DNA of 63,987 nt, filler included, from Pelomyxa schiedti (taxonomy: Eukaryota; Protista; Evosea), in the NCBI GenBank assembly GCA_020536535.1. It is 12 parts of 12 records of this genome, joined end to end, with 100 filler letters (N's around TTAATTAATTAA, not from the genome) between each part and the next. Parts side by side here need not be neighbours in the genome. Positions count along the whole stretch, not along the records: positions 1 to 10,113 come from JAHLWZ010001277.1; 11 more parts are not named here. One strand, written 5' to 3'. Made by a program: the position numbers and the translations under genes. Of the stretch, positions 1-10,113 are shown piece after piece. Numbering within the stretch: the stretch's first letter is position 1; each line of letters begins with the position of its first letter. Under the pieces are notes generated by a model, which saw nothing but the letters and a program-made list of their open reading frames with translations, was not told the DNA's origin and searched no databases.

Positions 1-936
1 CCGTTTTAGAATCAAAAAGGAAAAAAAAATTCGGTTCGTTAGAAGTGTAGGGGGGAGGCTGTCGAATTTTTTCTAAGCTAAAACCTCGCGGTCTGGTATT
101 GAAAAAATTTAGCCAAATAAAAAAAATCGCCGCCTCGATGTTGTGTTGTTGTGTGGCTGCTGGCATTGGGGGAAAGACGTGTGGGGTGTATTTTGTACAG
201 GGGGTAGGTACCTCACACGGGCAGTTGCATCAGCGACCGCCATTACGGTACGCCGTAACCCCTGCGCGCGCGCATGTGCAGGTGGCCCAACTGCCGCACG
301 AGAAACAACCCTGCAATGCAGTGGGTGTAGTCTATTCGTTGACCGAGCAGTTACGTGCAGCCGGGATCGACCCCGCAAGACGACGTCCAGTACGAGGGCA
401 AGAGCGAGACAACCAGTGGTGACGTGGAAATTCATGCAACTGCAAAATCACGATGAGTTGTGTGGCAGGATGATACTGAGCCCCGCTTTATTTTCATACA
501 GATGGCCACTCAATGCACTGTGCTCTGGGACTCACAGAGCCACTGGCGTTGCCCTCGTTACTGGTACTTTTTTTTTTTTTTTTTTTTTTTTGAGCTTTTT
601 GTCTTCCCTATATATATGTTGCATCCCTGGTTTGTGCGTAAGTTGGTTTTGTTCTATCTGTGATTAACTCGCTAATCCTGGTTACAATGACCAAATAGTT
701 TTGGTGGCATTATGTTAGGCGGACTTTCTTCACATTTTCATCCTGCCATGAGACAATATTTAAAAAGGTATGGCGGGCTACGTAATCCAATGGTGCGTGG
801 GTTTTCCGATGTTATATCATATGCTTGCCGGCCTGCGCCACATGGCCACCCTACTGGAAAGTATCTAAATAACAAGTGAAACAACCCGGCACACCATGCA
901 CTCTCACTATCAATTCGCGGACGCGCAGTGCTTCGT

Positions 937-2100
937 TCACTTGAAACTTCCGCTAAAGGGGGCAAAAAACAAGAAGAAACAAAAAAAACAGTAGCCCAAC
1001 AGCAGGGCCAAGTTTTGGGGCAGGGTTGACACGTTGTGTAAACCTACCAGATTCCTAGCCGCGGATTTTGCGGAATTGTGGTGGCATGTATTCTGGGGAA
1101 TTGCAGCCGTGCCGGGCATGTTGAGGCAATGTGGAGGATGTGGGACATGCAGTTGTTCAGGGGGCTTCATGCTGGTTGCAATTTGGAGAGCATGGTTCCG
1201 CAGGGTTGGAGGGACTCCCTTGGTGTTGAGATTCTTGACCAGGTTGATCCAGTGAGCCGGTGTTGGTTTCTCTATCATTGTGGTCCGAAGCTTGTGGTGC
1301 AGGGATTTTCCTGGGCGTGCATCCAGGATTGCCCTGTAAATGTCAGTGGGGTTCCTGAGGGTAGGTGGAATCTTATCATCGAACGCGAGGTAGGTAAGAC
1401 CTTCTTTGGGTCCGTGCGGTTTGGATGCCTGAAGGCCGACAAGGCGGTGGCTACATTCCACCATGCCATGTCCAGCAGGGGTGGCACAGCCCCCATCTGC
1501 TGTGAGCGTTGTCAAATGCTCTTGCGAGGTGCAGTGGGATGGGGTGATCAGCCTGTAGATCTTTCCAATTCTGGGTTCCACACAGTCTTGAGTGGATAGA
1601 TGTCAAAGCGGAATTGGTAGGTGAGGATTGAGTTGGCCATAGAGGTTGGTTGCTAGGATTTTCATTTGCAAACCAATGACTCTGGGAATGATCTCCTGGG
1701 CTCTCCCTTGCACAACACCGAAATAACACCATCGAAAGACGGAGTCGAGAAGAACTTGTTGCTAAAACGGGCAAAAACCAGGGTGTAAAAGTGATCACAG
1801 GACTGTGCGGGATATTACTGCCACAAGGTCCAATCCAATGATGAGGAGAGATACACCTTGCGTTCTTCCCGAAAGGTTGGATTGCCCTCCTCGCCGTCAT
1901 AATCCCATGGATGTTTGGCCAGCGTAGAGTGAAGGGGTAATAAACAACTCTTGGAGGAGGATATCGCAGGCGACTCGTCGTCGGGTTTCTCCCACAGCAG
2001 AGAGTTCGCCTTTACTGTTGTGGCTCTTATCCCTCCTCTTTCTCGCCACAAGTTCAACAGCAACAACAGAGGTGCAGTGTGGTGCCAAGTCAGTGATTGA
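937..2100 (-). mobile_element. Degenerate 3' fragment of a non-LTR (L1/Tx1-like) retrotransposon ORF2, post-RT region
   Basis: Frameshifted peptides KILATNLY / NSILTYQFRFDIYPLKTVWNP / RIGKIYRLITPSHCTSQEHLTTLTADGGCATP align with the post-RT region of the element at 16.7-17.1 kb (KIVATNIYIHSILQYQCRFEIFSPSQVWHPYMTKIFHLVTPSNCTSLEHLMALKKQGGLAT). Both also share SAARNLVGL / SAAKTIVGL. Boundaries are approximate. Confidence 0.75.
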
Positions 2101-2434
2101 GATCAGACAGATATCAAATTCACATTCTTGAGCAATCAAACTCAGCCCTGCCTTGTGCTGCTGCTACTGCCACCAAACACGCAAGCAACCGCACCGTGCC
2201 ACTGTCCTCAAGTACTAAGCAATATCAATCATCATTGCATGTACAAAGTCATCCAGTTTGTTCAAGACTGATTATGCTTCCTTGACATGTCATCACCCTC
2301 ACAGACGGCTCTTCAGTACAAAAAGGAAGGGAAATTTTTTAAAGAGAACGGAAATCTTTTTCGTTGGTGCGGGGGAGACAAAAGACCGAGAAGGAGGTGG
2401 TTTCAACCTTTTTTTTTTTATTTTCACAGTGCAG

Positions 2435-5400
2435 CTAGACAAAAATGTGTGCCACAGTTTGGTACTCAGTGTCACTGGGCTTCAAGAGGATAACAAAGGT
2501 GGAACTCTTCTGTAGAGAGGGCTCTCCATAGTGTGCAAATGCAGTGACTTTTACTGGTACCCGGCCATCAGCGGGACAGTAGGATGATAGAGGTGATAGC
2601 AACTTGACACGAATGTCATACCTCCCCGTTATTGCACGCTTGAGCATATACTGAACTGGTCCTGGATTGGTGTTAGAATTCCAGTCTTTTTTGTTTTAGC
2701 ACTCTGTACCATTCCCAGGGAAGTCACGGGACATAAGTCCCCCAATCTTTGTATGATTATGGAAAGGGTGGCAATTTTCGCCGGTTGGTTCACTATGTGT
2801 TTGTGAGTGATTGCCATGCCACAACCATTCATAACACAATTTTACCTCACGCACAACGAGACATCACAAGGATCATGAGCCCACTGGATTCGAACGAGTA
2901 TATCAAGAGGTAATGGCGCATTCCGAGAAACACCATCTACGCAAAGGTTTGCAGACATGTCTGGAGTAGTACCAACGCGTTGGCACTCAAACCGTTGCAT
3001 ACAGTGGAGATCCTATTTAAGGTGGGTTAGTATTCTGCCTCTTTTAGATGCGTATTGGCCATTACCATTAACGCAGGAAGTTCCACTTGCGTAAAGCGCG
3101 GGTCCCAAATTCGAGTTAATATGATGTCGGCAATTCTGGTACACTCGTCAAACTGTTGTGGTGTTGTACTGTATGTGGCCCGAAGCAAGTCAAAATAGCT
3201 TTGTGGTTCTTCGCCTCTCTCTTTGGAGATAATTTTGTATAACGCTTGAGCAATTTGCCAGCATTCATGTTCCTCCAAGATGTAGGCAACTGTATTGGAG
3301 ATATGACGGAATTATTTTTGGGAATTTTTTTCATTCTTTGCTTTAGAGGTACCTGCTCTTTGAAGTTGGTGGTCATCACGTGAAATGTCAAGAATCGAAG
3401 TAAGAATTCTTACGGCACTATCCTTGGCACCCACAGATAACAATTTTCTTCCACAAGCAAGGTAGAAGAGTGTTGAGGAATGAGGGGAATCTTTGTGTTT
3501 GGTAAACCATTCATATCTACTAGATATCGGTAACAAACAAGATGAGAAGGGGTACAAACGACAAGGTACTAGGAACATTAAATTCTAGGTAGACTTCTTC
3601 CCAAGACGCAGTGAAATCTTCAGCATTACTAATGGTGAATTCATTGCCTGTTCAAAGTCATCCCCAAAAGAGTTTATACAGGGACTTACATGAGTCTGCA
3701 AACTGAACTTCGGATTCAGGAACGTCATCATTGTGCACATAACTGTCAACAGCAACAGTGTTCGTGAGTGGCAAAAGGGATGTGCCAGTCGCAAAGAAAG
3801 AAAGAGATGTGCTGGGAACAAGAGGGGGTTGCGCAAATGAAATAACAGGAATTTCTGTTGATGTTTCTGTTTCTTTAGCTGGGCTGCGATACGCATGGGG
3901 AACGTAGATAATTGAAGGTGCGTAATTATCCACGGGAACAGAAGTGCCAGGACTAAGGTGGTTAAGAGGTTTTTCCCGAGTAAAAAAAAACGCACCCAGA
4001 AAAAAGCACACTCAGTGCTTGTAACGTTTTCACAAGAACGAAGAGAAACAATTGTGAAAGAGGTGTTACAAGATGAACTGGTAGGAAAATAAGAACCCCA
4101 AAAAAGAAGTATAGGCTCCGAAATAAGGTCTTCAGAAAATGCCCATTAGGGGGTAGTCTCTTCAGAAAGGTTGAGGAAACTATGAAATAGTGGATAGAAA
4201 GAAACTTGCGTATTAGAACTGGGTGCAACCGAAGGAGGATATTGAGACATGAGAGCAGAGAGGTCACATTGAATACTTTGAGTTAAGCGAGTGAATGACG
4301 ATTTGCCGACACCGCTGGAACCAAGAGATACCACTGGTAATTGATTAGAATAGGTGATGCTTCCTCCAGAAGGGATCAACCTTTAATAAGTGCACTACGT
4401 TTTATGAGATACGTTTGAGTAAACAAGTCACTAATGGCACTCACAACATTGCTCAGATTTTTGCAGGAGATCTCGAAAAATTTCAAACCATTTTTAGCTG
4501 CAAACTCAGAAGCCACATTATAAGACACCTTCAAGTCGAGATGAGGAGAATGTAAACTGGCAGTTGCATACTTGTCTCTTATCCTCAATATCAAGTTTAT
4601 TGCCTAATAAAACAACATAATATGGAGGAGTGCAATTCTGTTTTATTTGGTCCAGTGTGTTGCATGCATCATTGAATGATTCTATATCAGTAATATCATA
4701 CATGAGTGCAACTCCAGCCAAAGAGCGGTAATATCTAAGTCCCATTAAGAATTCAAGAAACGTTTTAAAATAGAAGTTACGCCGTAGTTATTGTTCTAAA
4801 GCGCTCATTACCTGAAGGAATATAAGAGGATCTCAAAAAGTAAAATTTGGTACCTGCTGTGTCCCAGATTTGGAATTTAGCATCTCCTGACTTTACAATA
4901 GAAAAGTCAACCCCAATTGTACACAGATGACTCTCTGAAAACTGATATCCATCCTACATAGGAATGAAGTAAGATACCCGTAGGAGTTCCTTCATATGTA
5001 TTAACCTCTATAGTTATTTCAGCCCGTGGGGGTGCTGTTGTGGAGGCTGGGGGTGCTGCTGCTTGTTCAGGTAGAGTCATGACACCAGCATAGCACTTCT
5101 TCCTTGCGCCTAGCCCACGGATACGTAGCATATCCTGTCCAGGTCTAATTTCTTTTAAAATACTAAAGGCTTCCCCGATTTTCTGTTATGCATTAGAATT
5201 TCTCTGGTAAAAAATGGCAAACAGAAAAAGCAGAGCCAAGCATCCCACCAGTCCTAAGTCTGGCTGCCTGCTTATAAAACGCTTGTGATTGCAGGGAAAG
5301 GTCTTCAGACTTTTCGACTAAATCCTCAAGACTTAGCCCACGCTGCAGAACATGATCAACTAAACAAATCTTCATTCAAAATTTTGGAATCTTCAAGCTA

Positions 5401-8400
5401 CATACTGTTTTTGTTCATTACCCCTTCTATGGCATCTGCAGTTTGATCTTCTGCAGCCCAGTTTCTTGCAACTTTAGCACGTGAACTAGCTCTCATTGCA
5501 CTTTGGGGTGGTAGTGGGAGTGCAGCCCTTTGGGGTGGTAGTGGGAGTGGTTGTGCAGTACTTTGGAGTGGTTGTGCAAAGGAAGGCGGAGCTTCAGCGC
5601 ACGCAACTTGTTGAATATCTTCGAATAGACCCGAACCCTCCTCCTTAGCCAGTAGAGTTGGTGCAGAAAGAGGCATCTGTTGAGGTATAGACCATCCAGA
5701 TATCTCTGAATCCCAGTCTTCATCATGTTCCTCTTCTAAGTTTTCTTCTTGTTTCTCCTCCTTAAGACTTAAATCTTCACCCCAATCTCCTCCGCCAATG
5801 TCTGATTCATATTCTACAGTTTCTGGCACAACCTCGCCAGTGGCTTGAGGTTTTCCCAAATTTTCACTTGGAGTGTCTTCAAAAGCTGTGGCTGATGTAA
5901 CCGTAGGAGGCGGCGGAGAGGCAGTCAACACGGGAGGTGGAGATGATGCCCTCTTTGAGCTTTTGCAGAACGCATATAGATTTTTCTTTTTAGACACACT
6001 TTTTCGCTCCTGCTGACGTTCTATTAGAGTATGTTCAAATGGAAGTGTCACCTGAGTCTTTTCTGTATGAGGAGGTTTGGTATCAGGCATGGACTTCGCC
6101 TCAGGGATTTCACTTGGTTTGGGCGTGGTCTCACCACCAAGCTCAGAAGGTGGTAATTGGGGCGCAATGTAAAGTGAATGTGGCTCATTCTCTAATTCCA
6201 TAGACAGTGCGGAAATATCATGAACCAATTCACTCCTTTGAGTGGACTGTACTTGTAAGGTGAAGTCGTCACTCCACTCAGAAGTAAAACAAGATGCCGG
6301 CACTTCCAATTTTCTTTCTTTTTGTTCTGCGTGCAATTCCTGTGTATTATTGCAAAGCCAACCTACTGCTACTTGAGGTGAGCCAAAGCGTTATGAAAAG
6401 GAACTAACACCTCCTGGGGAGGGAAACTGGACCAATTCATAATTTTCAGGCTCCTCGAAATGTTTTCCTCTACTCATGAAGTGCCATACATGAGGTTGAT
6501 TTGTTTTCCCATCGTAGGTATTATTGAACCACTCCATTTTGCTTAGCCATAAATCTTGGACATCAGTTTTTTTCTTGGAAAGTTTGTTGCCTTCTTTTTG
6601 TCTGGATTGTTCTGTACCCCACCCCGCCCCAGCCCAAAGGAAGTCAACCTCCTATTACAGATTTTGTTTTACAAACCCCTATTTATTTCAAATAGCCTGT
6701 GTATTTCAGGGAGACTCTCTTCATCAGGTTCAATGTCATATTTCAGGTATTGTTCAAGAGAGTCAAGTACGATTAAACTAATTCCTGTTGTTAAATGTGC
6801 CAAATGTGTTAGAACTACCTAGTATTTTCAGTTACAATAGCATATTCCTGTCCCAATTTGAGAATTGCTCTGCTGGTTTCAGAGGAAATGTCCAATTCAA
6901 GGTCTTCAATCTTTCTTTGTGCCCAGTGTCTTGCTAACTACATGTATTTTACAAAAATCGAATTGATTGAAGTTTTACTAATTTGGAACCGTGAACGCAA
7001 TAGTGCATATCTAGATCTACTTGAATAGTTTTTGAGGTAGCATTGGTACTGCAGAATTAATAGTGCATCAGTTTTGACAGAAGGCTTACCCATAGTACAA
7101 TAAAATTGTGAATATTGAATCAACTGTCCAAGTTGAAATTTTCCCACAAAGGATTGACATGTTTGTAGTTGGTGCCTTTGGATATACTTCCTCTAGCTGC
7201 AAAAAATTAGCTGGAGTGGATAAAGTACCATAAACCTGATTAGGATGTGACACTTGAAGAAGTTTGAAGACTGGTTTACACATTTTCAGTGCAGCAGATC
7301 GCGCATTTTCAGAGAGTAGGTTGAAGTACATTCCACTCGATCGGTGTGACCACGATCTTGTCGATGCAAGTTGGGATTTGGAAGCAAGAAAAAGGGAATG
7401 AAACTTCATAAGCAGATTACATGTCTCGACAGAAGAGGAAACTGAAAAAATGGGAACTGGAAACTCTCGGATATCATTGTCAGCCAATCTTACAGTGGAA
7501 AACCTGGAAATAATTAGAAGAAGGGAGGAACAGGAAAGCTACCCATCACTGAAAAGAATATGAAAGGAATATGACTTGCCCGAAACTGGAGATACTTTGG
7601 ATGTGAGGGGGAGAGAACTTAAGTCAGTTCCACCATCGTAGGTTAACTTTTTAAAGTTAGGTATCATTTGAAGAATGCAAAGAAAGAACTTTCTCAAGGT
7701 TTCTAAAAAGATCCTGTGAAAGAGGATATTGCACAGGGGGCTCACATATTTCATGGAAACAATACAACTACAGAAAAATTAAAAACACCAAGTAAGTTGG
7801 AAAACGTACATCAATTGTAGAATTGGGCAAAATGGAGGAAAGGAAGTTGATAAGCTGATACTCCAGAGATAAATTCTGCCTATGCCTGCTTCTGGAGCAA
7901 TCCTGATACTCCATTATGAAAAACATAAAAAAGCTAATGATCACACACCCAGAAAATACCTATGTGGATAGGGTCAAGTACACAGTCACCTGAATTACTG
8001 CTGGCTTCGATATGGGGTATTTTTATACAAAAAAAAGTCTCAGGCTTGGTTGGACTTCCCTGAACAAGACACATTTAACATTAAAAATAGTAAACTTGAC
8101 GGACTTGCTCCAGAAGAATCAATGGAACATCAATGGGCGTTGTTGGCACATGAATCACAAAAGTAGATAACTTAAGCTTTGCAAAGGGGAGGGAGGTGTG
8201 TTCCAAATTGAGAATATACTGAGTTTTCAGTTCTGGTGATTTCCTGAAAGCAGTGCCTTCCAGAAAACTAGTAAACCACCTGCCAGTACTCTTAATCCAG
8301 GGGTTCTGGTTCACCCCGAAGGGCTGATTTATCTAGTGTTTTGTTTGTTATTGTTCAATAGGTTTTGGTAATTATATACCTCCAGGTGAAGTTGGAAGAG

Positions 8401-9183
8401 GTCCAAGACAGTATTGTGATCAACAAAGTTGAACTCGTGCAAGTAAAGGAGAACTGAACCTTCATCAGGAAAAAGATGATAAAAATGAGAAGGAACAACC
8501 AGGATCCAGTGAAGATGAGTGCAGCTCATTTGTGTACTCAATCCATACGGTTCTGTACTTGTCTGGTGCGAAAGGGAAGACTCGAACCTTGAAGACATTC
8601 CCTGCTACATGCTCACAAATTGATGGTGCCCCTTTTCGTTCTCTCACCTTGAGAGGTGCAAATTTAGAGAAGAAATTAACAAAGTGAGCCAAACCCCAGT
8701 TTCAAAGGCTACACGAGCCACTTCCTTTGGGCAAACACAAGCCCTGACCATTTTGCCATCAATATCTACAGCATAACCACACACTGTGGAGCCTATATAA
8801 AAAGGGTTAGAAACTATTGTAGCACCATGAATAAAAATATAAAAAGATGAAAAACAGTAAGAACCTTCCGGCACTGGGAAAACGAGGTTCCCTGCAACTT
8901 CTTCAGAACTTGGATTTCTGAATCTCATTGAAACCTGAGTACCTAAAACACAATAATTAGAAAATTGGCATGCCTAACGCATCCCCATTGGGGGGCTTGA
9001 GTTGTAAGGTGCGTTCACCGAACAGTCATTTCCAACCCATAAGTCACACTCACAAGACAAAAAGCCAGTGACAGTGACCGACACAGACAGGGCGACCAAC
9101 GGCATGTGTGACAGCGGCGACGAGGGAGGCACGCCCTCCCTCGTCATCTCAACGCCACCGCTGCCATCCCCCTCACTAGTCAT
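2435..9183 (-). CDS. Multi-exon VIT-vWA-(acidic/Pro linker)-R-SNARE coil-circularly permuted Rab-like GTPase-TPR-DUF2135-like protein
   Basis: VIT: FRNPSSEEVAGNLVFPVPEG..VCGYAVDIDGKMV..KEVARVAFE and GNVFKVRVFPFAPDKYRTVWIEY. vWA: MIDAS-like DCSRS (~7888-7902) and YDGGTDL, followed by WAQRKIEDLEL. R-SNARE: VMNKNIDHVLQRGLSLEDLVEKSEDLSLQSQAFYKQA. Rab motifs TIGVDF, WDTAG, GNKLD and EISCK come before VVSLGSSGVGKSS. TPR region: FYLACG..AVRILTSILDISRDDHQLQR, GEEPQSYFDL, WDPRFTQVELPALM. DUF2135-like end: LPLDILVRIQW..EPTGENCHPFHNHTKIGGLMSRDF..GPVQYMLKRA. One splice junction near 4080-4200 is ambiguous. Confidence 0.8.
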
Positions 9184-9853
9184 TTCTTGTAACGGAATAG
9201 AATTAACCGTTTACTGAGATCCTAAAAGAACCCCACCCCCACTATCAAGGAACAGCACAACACGCACGCAGCACAAGTTCGATAGCAACGGAACCATAAG
9301 CAACAGTGGGCATTGACAAACTGTGGTGATTGCAGGATATCAACCACCATCCAACCTTCTTACCAGAGAAAGGGGAAAAGGAGTGTGTTGTTCTACAGTG
9401 GAGGGATACTCCAGTGAAAAAAAAACACAAAAAAAGATGACAGAATGAAACAGGAACCACAGAGCCCTAATACCCACCCGACTTACCAGATCCGAGAGTG
9501 GCCACTAGCTCTACCAACAAACAAAACCCAGTTCCCAGTCCTTTTATACCCGGAGATTTCCGCCAATCCGGACTTATGGGTCGTTTTGTTTCCGATCGTT
9601 AACGAAGGTTGATCAGAGGTTGCTGGGTCGCCCACCATGATGCTGGGAGCAAACACCAAAGAAATACTTGCGCAAGGCACAATTGTTTGATATGTTGTTC
9701 CTTTCTTTTTTGACCCTATAAAAAGTGATCACATAGAGCTGCGAGTCGGGTGGCGAGGAATGTGGATTGGGTGCTGAATCACGTGGTGTAATGGTGGGTG
9801 CTGGACACGTTTTTTGTTGTGTGATGCCAGTGGGTGGTGATTTTTTTCCCTAC

Positions 9854-9923
9854 AAAAAGTGCATCATCACTGCCCAAAATCACCACCCGGGCGGTGATTT
9901 TGGGCGGTGATGATGCACTTTTT
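9854..9923. repeat. Near-perfect ~70-bp palindrome within a cluster of ATCACC(A/G)CCC motifs (9830-9995)
   Basis: The left arm aaaaagtgcatcatcactgcccaaaatcacc and the reverse complement of the right arm, aaaaagtgcatcatcaccgcccaaaatcacc, differ at one position. Confidence 0.9.
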
Positions 9924-10113
9924 GCAGTCAAATCGGATCACCGCCCCGGGTGGTGGTTGAGCACATAAGCCAGTCAGTAAAATCACCACCCAGGGTTAAC
10001 CACAAGAAAAAAACTTTTTTTTATGTTGCTCTTAATCTAACTCGATATTTAACAGTGCTGACAGGCCAGTTAAAGCCACTATTTGTCGCAATAAGCACTC
10101 CCAAGTGTTGTGT

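What the first reader, a model, noticed from the sequence alone, without database searches (positions are those of the whole stretch)
4280..4953. Rab-like GTPase domain with circularly permuted motif order G2-G3-G4-G5-G1
Seen in sequence: canonical GT-AG splicing gives DGYQFSESHLCTIGVDF (G2), [43 protein letters not shown] (G3, Rab8/Rab1-like), VVLLGNKLD (G4), FFEISCKN (G5), then helix 5, a short linker and IKVVSLGSSGVGKSSF (beta1 plus intact G1 P-loop). I found no GxxxxGK(S/T) in the exons upstream of G2. The switch II catalytic Gln is replaced by Asn (DTAGN). Established knowledge: the known permuted GTPases are YRG/YlqF-YawG (G4-G5-G1-G2-G3) and cpRAS (G3-G4-G5-G1-G2, Ras-like, often with vWA). 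Inference: this is a third permutation type, derived from Rab. It is structurally plausible because the alpha5 end and beta1 start lie close together in the G-domain, and it may hydrolyse GTP poorly.
Basis: partly seen in the sequence, partly recalled or inferred. Interest (0 to 1): 0.92.

Follow-up and report, generated by a model that had tools for sequence, protein, structure and literature searches.

The report
Circularly permuted Rab GTPase domain
A gene of the anaerobic amoeba Pelomyxa schiedti encodes a Rab-type molecular switch whose first segment (the GTP-binding P-loop) has moved to the end of the domain; this order is confirmed by RNA, shared by two sister genes, and not found in the literature searched.

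Summary
On the minus strand, exons 4854-4953, 4781-4811, 4572-4734, 4381-4528 and 4206-4333 encode a Rab G domain in the order G2-G3-G4-G5-helix 5-strand 1/P-loop (G1)-helix 1.

- **RNA support:** a single-cell RNA-seq contig shows every GT-AG join, including the G5/helix 5 exon to the G1 exon. The frame stays open for about 480 further codons with no second G2-G5 set.
- **No other P-loop:** no other GxxxxGK[ST] exists in the 10.1 kb piece.
- **Gene:** the product is KAH3731978.1 of Pelomyxa schiedti (1688 aa, misnamed "TonB-dependent receptor"). It has a VIT domain, a long linker, a Ykt6-like R-SNARE motif, the permuted Rab, a hydrophobic stretch and a C-terminal region.
- **Paralogues:** two P. 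schiedti proteins (VIT-vWA with a syntaxin-like SNARE motif; PARP-VIT-vWA) carry the same permutation. All three genes have a phase-1 intron at the same spot before strand 1.
- **Structure:** AlphaFold models are confident. The P0001 model aligns to solved YRG-type permuted GTPases through strand 1, the P-loop and helix 1 (Z about 10).
- **Not cpRAS:** the cut site, the subfamily (Rab1/8- and Rab5-like, not Ras) and the architecture all differ.

No homologue with this order was found outside Pelomyxa, and no paper describes one. GTP binding and cellular role are untested. Verdict: a real, new variant of circularly permuted GTPase.

The parts
2435..9105 (-). Whole gene, about 34 exons, encoding P0001 = KAH3731978.1 (1688 aa) of Pelomyxa schiedti
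   Evidence: Exact mapping of P0001 onto the window. Identity of the protein. RNA joints cover 5260 down to 3353 and part of 6777-7405. There is no RNA bridge over about 5290-5488 or 5887-6682, so the link to the VIT part rests on the 312-codon open exon, the gene model, and the same architecture in the paralogues.
8501..9105 (-). Exons for the VIT domain (residues 4-114)
   Evidence: Pfam VIT PF08487, 68 bits, E 9e-19; exon map.
5253..5445 (-). R-SNARE motif (residues 922-970), Ykt6-like, split by the intron at about 5358-5406
   Evidence: Pfam Synaptobrevin 44.6 bits against a cutoff of 26.4, profile positions 10-58 of 89, no TM part. Best solved match is YKT6, E 4e-5.
4854..4953 (-). Exon with switch I/G2 (TIGVDF), strands 2-3 and G3 (WDTAG); new N-terminal edge of the G domain
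   Evidence: Aligns to Rab1A from residue 31. Pfam Ras profile starts at position 23.
4781..4811 (-). Micro-exon for switch II, [10 protein letters not shown] (Asn in place of the catalytic Gln)
   Evidence: RNA joints 4808>4851 and 4734>4781.
4572..4734 (-). Exon for YYRS...GNKLD...KRQ (strand 4, helix 3, strand 5, G4)
   Evidence: Pfam Ras 41.5 bits, profile positions 68-121; RNA joints.
4381..4528 (-). Exon for helix 4, strand 6, G5 (EISCKN), helix 5 and the 3-residue linker, ending ...ALIK
   Evidence: Pfam Ras profile positions 125-159; AlphaFold helix at model residues 134-149.
4334..4380 (-). 47-nt phase-1 GT-AG intron exactly at the helix 5 to strand 1 junction (K|V)
   Evidence: RNA joint 4333>4381. 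Same position and phase in the two paralogous genes.
4206..4333 (-). Exon for strand 1, the P-loop (G1, GSSGVGKS at 4322-4299), helix 1 and the exit linker
   Evidence: Aligns to Rab1A residues 4-22. AlphaFold strand at 153-159 and helix at 166-174, pLDDT about 92. Covered by structural alignments to YqeH and a pre-60S permuted GTPase.
3996..4159 (-). Exon for a hydrophobic stretch (residues about 1237-1284), a possible membrane hairpin
   Evidence: RNA joints 4159>4206 and 3952>3996. Kyte-Doolittle 19-residue windows reach 2.03. No dedicated TM predictor was run.
2435..3952 (-). C-terminal region (residues 1285-1688) with no recognised domain
   Evidence: RNA joints down to 3353. Introns below 3290 come from the gene model and the frame tracer. 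Pfam gives only a sub-threshold GET4 match.

Best explanation
The region encodes a genuine, expressed Rab-family G domain that is circularly permuted, with its new ends in the loop between helix 1 and switch I. The chain enters at switch I (G2) and runs through G3, G4, G5 and helix 5. After three residues it continues into strand 1, the P-loop (G1) and helix 1, then leaves the domain. The order is therefore G2-G3-G4-G5-G1. This is a third natural cut site, beside YRG/YlqF (G4-G5-G1-G2-G3) and cpRAS (G3-G4-G5-G1-G2).

Shown: the order in DNA and RNA; its presence in three diverged paralogues of one species; the shared junction intron; Rab affinity; and confident models in which the C-terminal segment sits in the usual central-strand and P-loop position.

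Inferred: the domain still binds guanine nucleotide, because all five motifs are intact, and acts as a switch inside a large VIT-domain scaffold. Its entry point (switch I) is wired to an upstream SNARE motif and its exit (helix 1) to a hydrophobic anchor. The nucleotide state could thus be passed directly to the flanking parts, probably in membrane traffic. In this paralogue the Gln to Asn change in switch II suggests slow intrinsic hydrolysis.

The permuted junction most likely arose once, for example by tandem duplication followed by loss of the outer parts. The switch I to helix 3 half of this copy looks as if it was later replaced from a Rab1/8-type gene.
For: - **Splicing and open frame:**
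- **Single P-loop in the piece:**
- **Pfam Ras profile matched only from position about 22 onward** in all three proteins: P0001 23-159, P0153 22-160, P0173 14-155 of 162.
- **Two-part matches to solved Rabs in swapped order:** P0153 residues 11-149 match Rab5A 28-166, and 159-177 match Rab5A 7-25. P0001 residues 13-138 match Rab1A 31-160, and 151-169 match Rab1A 4-22.
- **Three paralogues align without a gap from G5 to G1,** with 52 invariant columns.
- **Phase-1 intron at the identical K|V spot** in all three genes.
- **AlphaFold2:** pLDDT 88 and pTM 0.84; pLDDT 83 and pTM 0.81; strand 1 and helix 1 at pLDDT about 87-95.
- **VIA-align on the P0001 model:** Rab3C Z 16.1 over model residues 11-151. 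The natural permuted GTPases 8pv1_Cd (Z 10.5, model 42-180) and YqeH 3h2y (Z 10.4, model 45-189) align through strand 1, the P-loop and helix 1.
- **The RsgA profile, itself in G4-G5-G1 order,** matches across G4 to G1 weakly in all three.
- **Trees:** the C-terminal half unites the three (90/93). In the N-terminal half a single clade is rejected (AU p 0.026).
Against: - No biochemical evidence for nucleotide binding exists.
- The structures are predictions, and I could not inspect coordinates.
- All three members come from one single-cell genome assembly of one species. RNA support was obtained for this gene only.
- No RNA contig bridges the VIT exons and the SNARE/Rab exons.
- The clade in the C-terminal half carries a long-branch warning, and placing P0001 with Rab1/8 there is not rejected (AU p 0.16). 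A single origin is therefore likely but not proven.
- The functional coupling to the SNARE motif is pure inference.
Confidence: 0.85

Rival explanations
1. It is a member of the known cpRAS family (Elias and Novotny 2008), which is also found in Amoebozoa and often combined with a vWA domain.
For: cpRAS is a permuted Ras-superfamily domain. It occurs in amoebozoans such as Dictyostelium and Acanthamoeba and is combined with vWA. The paralogues here also carry vWA domains. Both share the helix 5 to strand 1 connection.
Against: cpRAS is cut between strands 2 and 3, so G2 follows G1; here G2 precedes G3. cpRAS carries the Ras-type TIE motif and groups in the RAS family; here the RabF-type motifs are present and the best hits are Rab1/8 and Rab5. 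cpRAS sits N-terminal to a zinc finger and a Sec23/24-type vWA. Here the G domain lies C-terminal to VIT(-vWA). No cpRAS sequence was available for a joint tree.
Confidence: 0.03
2. It is a decayed remnant of a tandem pair of Rab domains. The first lost its P-loop and the second lost everything after helix 1. The two pieces do not form one domain, and the protein is a pseudo-GTPase.
For: Tandem multi-Rab proteins are common among the closest database hits. Duplication followed by deletion is the textbook route to permutation. This copy has Asn for the catalytic Gln.
Against: All G motifs are intact in three paralogues that are only 33-40% identical. The linker length from G5 to G1 is identical in all three, which argues for selection on a single domain. 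AlphaFold places the C-terminal segment confidently, and the P0001 model superposes on solved permuted GTPases through that segment. Without it the sheet would lack its central strand and the nucleotide site.
Confidence: 0.07
3. It is an artefact: misassembly of a single-cell genome, a chimeric transcript, or a wrong gene model.
For: The genome comes from amplified single cells, contigs are short (10.1 kb), and the deposited name is plainly wrong.
Against: Three DNA-like runs give contigs colinear with the window, though these may be the source data. A separate RNA library gives the spliced form with ten canonical introns removed and an open frame. Two other loci on different contigs (31.8 kb and 65.2 kb) encode the same order with the same junction intron.
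Confidence: 0.03
4. The permutation arose twice: once in a Rab1/8-type gene (this one) and once in a Rab5-type gene (the two paralogues). It did not arise once with a later partial replacement.
For: On the whole domain and on the switch I to helix 3 half, this copy groups with Rab1/8-like sequences and the other two with Rab5-like ones. Monophyly is rejected on that half (AU p 0.026). Best solved hits differ accordingly.
Against: The cut site and the G5-to-G1 spacing are identical. The phase-1 intron sits at the same nucleotide position. Shared derived residues include FE[IV]S in G5 and AI in helix 5. All three have the same host architecture, and the C-terminal half gives a clade (90/93).
Confidence: 0.15

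Closest known systems
Canonical Rab GTPases (Rab1/Ypt1 and Rab8 for this copy; Rab5 for paralogues P0153 and P0173)
   Same: All five G motifs and Rab-type switch residues (IGVDF, KFQIW, RFRTIT, YYR, YDIT) are present. Identity is 41-47% to Rab1/8 over switch I to helix 5, and the P0001 model matches Rab8a/Rab1 with TM 0.73 and Rab3C with Z 16.
   Different: Strand 1, the P-loop and helix 1 come last instead of first. The domain is internal to a 1688-aa protein and has no C-terminal prenylation cysteines. Switch II has Asn for Gln in this copy, and the strand 2-3 hairpin is 4 residues shorter.
cpRAS (Elias and Novotny 2008, PMC2430557)
   Same: It is a eukaryotic, Ras-superfamily, circularly permuted G domain with helix 5 joined to strand 1. 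It is embedded in large proteins, is present in Amoebozoa and is associated with vWA.
   Different: Its order is G3-G4-G5-G1-G2, cut between strands 2 and 3. It belongs to the RAS family (TIE motif) and lies N-terminal to a zinc finger plus Sec23/24-type vWA. Here the order is G2-G3-G4-G5-G1, cut between helix 1 and switch I. The family is Rab and the domain lies C-terminal to VIT(-vWA).
YRG / YlqF-YawG permuted GTPases (RbgA, YqeH, RsgA, Nog2, Lsg1)
   Same: Helix 5 is joined to strand 1. The P0001 model superposes on YqeH (Z 10.4) and on a pre-60S permuted GTPase (Z 10.5) through G4, G5 and G1. There are weak RsgA profile matches across G4 to G1.
   Different: The YRG order is G4-G5-G1-G2-G3, cut between strand 3 and helix 2. 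YRG is an ancient TRAFAC family of ribosome-assembly factors, not Rab, and the partner domains differ.
VIT-vWA scaffold proteins (vault PARP4, VWA5A, ITIH type)
   Same: A VIT domain is present in all three proteins. vWA and, in one, a PARP catalytic domain are present in the paralogues. The post-vWA segment is weakly alignable.
   Different: Known members carry no GTPase or SNARE motif. In this copy the vWA domain is not detectable by Pfam or BLASTP.

Membership tests
Rab family (Ras superfamily) | G1-G5 nucleotide-binding motifs present and intact | tested here: met
   GSSGVGKS, T in TIGVDF, DTAG, NKLD and SCK are all present. Pfam Ras scores 118 bits.
Rab family (Ras superfamily) | Rab-specific switch-region motifs and closest similarity to Rabs rather than Ras, Rho or Arf | tested here: met
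   All top 60 solved matches are Rabs, led by Rab1A at 113.7 bits. For the paralogue, Rab5A scores 137.7 bits. The tree places the domains among Rab1/8-like and Rab5-like sequences. The list of RabF motifs is from my knowledge of Pereira-Leal and Seabra 2000.
Rab family (Ras superfamily) | Linear order G1-G2-G3-G4-G5 | tested here: not met
   The order is G2-G3-G4-G5-G1 in DNA, RNA and protein.
Rab family (Ras superfamily) | C-terminal hypervariable tail ending in prenylated cysteines | tested here: not met
   The domain is internal and the chain continues for about 480 residues. P0153 ends ...KHKHCL, which is not a standard Rab motif.
cpRAS | Order G3-G4-G5-G1-G2 (cut between strands 2 and 3) | tested here: not met
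   G2 and strand 2 precede G3, and nothing Ras-like follows helix 1. The definition comes from PMC2430557.
cpRAS | RAS-family affinity (TIE-type G2) | tested here: not met
   G2 is TIGVDF, TIGAAF or TVGANF, and the best hits are Rabs.
cpRAS | Monophyly with DdiCPRas1/2 and relatives in a tree | not tested
YRG/YlqF-YawG permuted GTPases | Order G4-G5-G1-G2-G3 | tested here: not met
   G2 and G3 precede G4. Only the shared G4-G5-G1 stretch aligns.
R-SNARE (the flanking motif) | Synaptobrevin-type SNARE heptad motif | tested here: met
   Pfam PF00957 scores 44.6 bits against a cutoff of 26.4. YKT6 is the best solved hit.
R-SNARE (the flanking motif) | Membrane anchor directly after the motif | tested here: not met
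   The Pfam match stops at profile position 58 of 89. The first hydrophobic stretch comes about 270 residues later, after the G domain.
VIT-vWA scaffold proteins | VIT domain followed by a vWA domain | tested here: inconclusive
   VIT is met at 68 bits. vWA is not found in P0001 but is clear in P0153 and P0173. MIDAS-like DCSRS, GGT and SDG residues in P0001 were seen by eye only.

The most novel reading that the evidence does not exclude
The permutation is adaptive wiring. Opening the chain at the helix 1/switch I loop attaches the upstream SNARE motif directly to switch I and the downstream anchor to helix 1. The protein would then be a self-contained, GTP-gated SNARE. The paralogues carry complementary motifs (Ykt6-like R-SNARE here, syntaxin-17/7-like Qa-SNARE in P0173). 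They could therefore pair in a nucleotide-controlled tethering or fusion step on a VIT-vWA scaffold.
Probability: 0.12. Interest if true: 0.9.

Novelty: new variant of a known kind. Interest (0 to 1): 0.74.

Why it matters
Circular permutation of the P-loop GTPase fold was once argued to be possible at only one site; cpRAS added a second. A third natural cut site, in the best-studied small-GTPase family, shows the fold tolerates opening right at switch I. That is useful for understanding folding constraints and for engineering permuted GTPase sensors.

The physical fusion of a Rab-type switch with SNARE motifs and a VIT(-vWA, -PARP) scaffold is an unreported architecture. It gives a testable handle on how Rab and SNARE functions can be coupled.

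The apparent mix of Rab1/8-like and Rab5-like halves behind one shared junction also offers a case study of exon-level exchange between paralogues.

Tried and rejected
- **DUF2135/YfaP-type C-terminus:** I suspected this from memory, but Pfam gives no support, so I dropped it.
- **vWA in P0001:** not confirmed by Pfam or by BLASTP against P0173.
- **First alignment for modelling (A2):** MAFFT split the Rab N-terminal fragments across strand 5 and the P-loop. I discarded it and used natural tandem-Rab segments instead (A3).
- **Word-index searches:** three searches and a motif scan of all 334 fetched proteins found the permuted order only in the three Pelomyxa proteins. P0010 looked permuted but is a tandem pair with a degenerate first P-loop.
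- **Fold searches:** AFDB clusters and the ESM Atlas gave only canonical or fused Rabs. One 206-aa AFDB entry (A0A6B2LIY3) aligns to model residues 7-179 at rmsd 5.6 and could not be examined further.
- **Terminal "clasp":** The second model has no N-terminal strand and only a two-residue strand after helix 1, so I make no claim.
- **Other scans:** Rfam found nothing; the tandem-repeat scan found only two short two-copy arrays, neither touching the G-domain exons.
- **Literature:** searches for a permuted Rab or the order G2-G3-G4-G5-G1 found nothing. The P. schiedti and Mastigamoeba genome papers do not mention it.
Full report
**Observation.** The feature lies on the minus strand. A six-frame motif scan finds one strict P-loop in the whole piece, GSSGVGKS at 4322-4299. 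It lies downstream of G2, G3, G4 and G5.

**Splicing.** Reads were laid on 3300-9250.
- One run is a single-cell RNA-seq library. It holds a 2143-nt contig (depth 16.4) that skips ten short segments, all GT..AG on the minus strand.
- The skipped introns are 5183-5222, 4954-5005, 4812-4853, 4735-4780, 4529-4571, 4334-4380, 4160-4205, 3953-3995, 3648-3689 and 3517-3559. A further one at 3290-3352 follows from the contig's loose end.
- Three other runs of the same study give unspliced contigs colinear with the window.
- Joining the exons gives one open frame. It runs from a SNARE motif through ...EITIE|DGYQFSESHLCTIGVDF...[19 protein letters not shown]...GNKLD...KRQ|VSYN...FFEISCKN...ALIK|VVSLGSSGVGKSSFTRLTQ... 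and stays open beyond.
- The G5/helix 5 exon is therefore joined to the G1 exon in RNA.
The frame continues about 480 codons to a stop at 2435-2437.

**Identity.** A search of 1.8 billion representative proteins with the 54-residue G4 exon returned a 100% match, P0001 (1688 aa). This is KAH3731978.1, "TonB-dependent receptor [Pelomyxa schiedti]", on a 10,113-nt contig. P0001 equals the RNA-supported frame in this region.

Pfam on P0001 gives:
- VIT at residues 4-114;
- Synaptobrevin (an R-SNARE motif without a TM part) at 922-970;
- Ras at 1043-1175, matching profile positions 23-159 of 162, so strand 1, the P-loop and helix 1 are missing from their usual place.

Residues 1205-1688 have no Ras match. 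There is therefore no hidden upstream G1 and no second G2-G5 set.

**A small family.** Searches with the G-domain region found two more P. schiedti proteins that cover the query through the C-terminal P-loop.
- P0153 ("PARP4", 1636 aa) has PARP, VIT and vWA domains, then the G domain at the very C-terminus.
- P0173 ("von willebrand factor a", 1026 aa) has VIT and vWA, a syntaxin-17/7-like Qa-SNARE motif (E 1.8e-6), the G domain and a C-terminal region.

Their G domains read G2 (TIGAAF / TVGANF), WDTAGQE, GNKLD, EVSAKT / EVSVKT, helix 5, then MKVVVVGGTNVGKSS / LKVIFLGNMGVGKTS.

The three align without a gap from G5 to G1, with 52 invariant columns at 33-40% identity. Pfam again matches Ras only from profile positions 22 and 14 onward.

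On their own contigs all three genes have a phase-1 intron at the same nucleotide position. It falls after the first base of the Val codon that opens strand 1. In P0153 this is a GC-AG intron, a class the genome paper reports at 1.59%.

**Relation to solved proteins.**
- Against PDB sequences, P0153 residues 11-149 match Rab5A 28-166 (135 bits) and residues 159-177 match Rab5A 7-25.
- P0001 residues 13-138 match Rab1A 31-160 (109 bits) and residues 151-169 match Rab1A 4-22.
- These are textbook circular-permutation signatures, and they assign the domains to Rab, not Ras.

**Structure.** I modelled P0001 1032-1232 with an alignment of the paralogues, canonical Rab cores and natural tandem-Rab segments that span helix 5 to strand 1 (A3).
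- AlphaFold2 gave pLDDT 88 and pTM 0.84. Element order is strands 2-3, helix 2, strand 4, helix 3, strand 5, helix 4, strand 6, helix 5 (134-149), strand 1 (153-159), helix 1 (166-174). The last two have pLDDT about 92.
- The P0153 domain gave the same order with pLDDT 83 and pTM 0.81.
- For the P0001 model, Foldseek and VIA-align put Rabs on top (Rab8a/Rab1 TM 0.73; Rab3C Z 16.1), aligned over residues about 11-151 only, as expected for sequential aligners.
- The same P0001 model also aligns to natural permuted GTPases through the C-terminal segment: a pre-60S factor (8pv1_Cd, Z 10.5, model 42-180) and YqeH (3h2y, Z 10.4, model 45-189).
- In the model, strand 1, the P-loop and helix 1 therefore sit relative to G4 and G5 as they do in solved permuted GTPases.

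**Comparison with known permuted GTPases.** According to PMC2430557:
- YRG proteins are G4-G5-G1-G2-G3, with no link between strand 3 and helix 2.
- cpRAS is G3-G4-G5-G1-G2, with no link between strands 2 and 3. It is RAS-family (TIE) and lies N-terminal to a zinc finger and a Sec23/24-type vWA.

The Pelomyxa domain shares the helix 5 to strand 1 link with both, but it is opened between helix 1 and switch I. It is Rab-type and lies C-terminal to VIT(-vWA). It is a third cut site. I could not include cpRAS sequences in a tree.

**Origin.** I de-permuted the three domains in a script and built trees with 59 canonical Rabs.
- On the whole domain, P0153 and P0173 are sisters (SH-aLRT 95) inside a Rab5-like group. 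P0001 falls in the Rab1/8-like group.
- On the switch I to helix 3 half, the three do not form a clade in any bootstrap tree, and forcing one is rejected (AU p 0.026).
- On the helix 3 to helix 5 plus strand 1 to helix 1 half, they form one clade (90/93), with a long-branch warning. Placing P0001 with Rab1/8 there is not rejected (AU p 0.16).
- Together with the identical junction, spacing and intron, and the shared FE[IV]S and AI residues, I favour one origin of the junction. Replacement of the front half of one lineage by a different Rab type would have followed. Two independent origins remain possible (about 15%).

**Function (inferred).** All G motifs are intact in three diverged copies, which argues for a working nucleotide site. 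The new N-terminus is at switch I, about 70 residues after a SNARE motif in P0001 and about 50 in P0173. The new C-terminus, at the end of helix 1, leads in P0001 to a hydrophobic stretch at 1237-1284. The domain ends lie next to each other, as suits an inserted module, and nucleotide-dependent movement of switch I could act on the flanking SNARE motif. DTAGN in P0001 suggests slow intrinsic hydrolysis; the paralogues keep Gln. None of this has been tested.

**Distribution and literature.** These searches are limited by word index, length windows and caps, so absence elsewhere is not shown. Full-text searches found no report of a permuted Rab or of this motif order. The P. schiedti genome paper does not discuss GTPases.

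**Verdict.** This is a real, expressed, new variant of circularly permuted GTPase, so far specific to Pelomyxa. Biochemistry and biological role remain open.

Noticed in passing
window 5253-5445 (minus); L002 about 5650-5830: The permuted Rab is preceded by a SNARE motif in two paralogues, and the motifs are of complementary type. P0001 has a Ykt6-like R-SNARE (Pfam 44.6 bits; YKT6 E 4e-5). P0173 has a syntaxin-17/7-like Qa-SNARE (E 1.8e-6). A Rab-SNARE fusion on a VIT scaffold is unusual in itself.
   Followed up: partly
window 2435-9105 (minus): The deposited product name "TonB-dependent receptor" is a misannotation. The protein is a eukaryotic VIT / R-SNARE / Rab multidomain protein with about 33 spliceosomal introns.
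   Followed up: yes
window 4852-4953 versus 4206-4734 (minus): The front half of the G domain (switch I to helix 3) is Rab1/8-like, while the paralogues' are Rab5-like. The back half groups all three together. This suggests exon-level replacement or gene conversion.
   Followed up: partly
window 5508-5576: A 33-nt tandem repeat (2.1 copies, 80% matches) lies inside the long linker exon. It encodes the proline-rich repeat ...PLPLPPQ(R/S)A... just upstream of the SNARE motif.
   Followed up: no
L001 (P0153 residues about 1233-1260 and 1355-1372): Paralogue P0153 has a cysteine-rich hydrophobic stretch (CCGSVCLCIFCLPCLCLLGGCGG) and a weak WH2-like motif (Pfam E 0.043) between the vWA domain and the permuted Rab.
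   Followed up: no
P0216 (P. schiedti, 913 aa): Another P. schiedti multidomain protein (ubiquitin, coiled coil, RING finger) ends in a Rab5-like domain in the normal order, with a degenerate P-loop (GETCTGAKTS). Rab5-like domains seem to have been recruited repeatedly into large proteins in this amoeba.
   Followed up: no
window 1-2400 and 9110-10113: The flanks are richer in G+C (up to 0.55) and carry overlapping ORFs on both strands with no obvious gene. Rfam found nothing. They were not examined further.
   Followed up: no
window 4824 and 3896: One DNA-like run (X4) differs from the window by A>T at 4824 (inside an intron) and by a 3-base deletion at 3896. These may be allelic or amplification differences between cells.
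   Followed up: no
AFDB entry A0A6B2LIY3 (206 aa): This unnamed AlphaFold DB cluster representative aligned to model residues 7-179 (TM 0.65/0.63, rmsd 5.6), a span that includes the C-terminal P-loop segment. Its sequence could not be fetched, so whether it is permuted is unknown.
   Followed up: no
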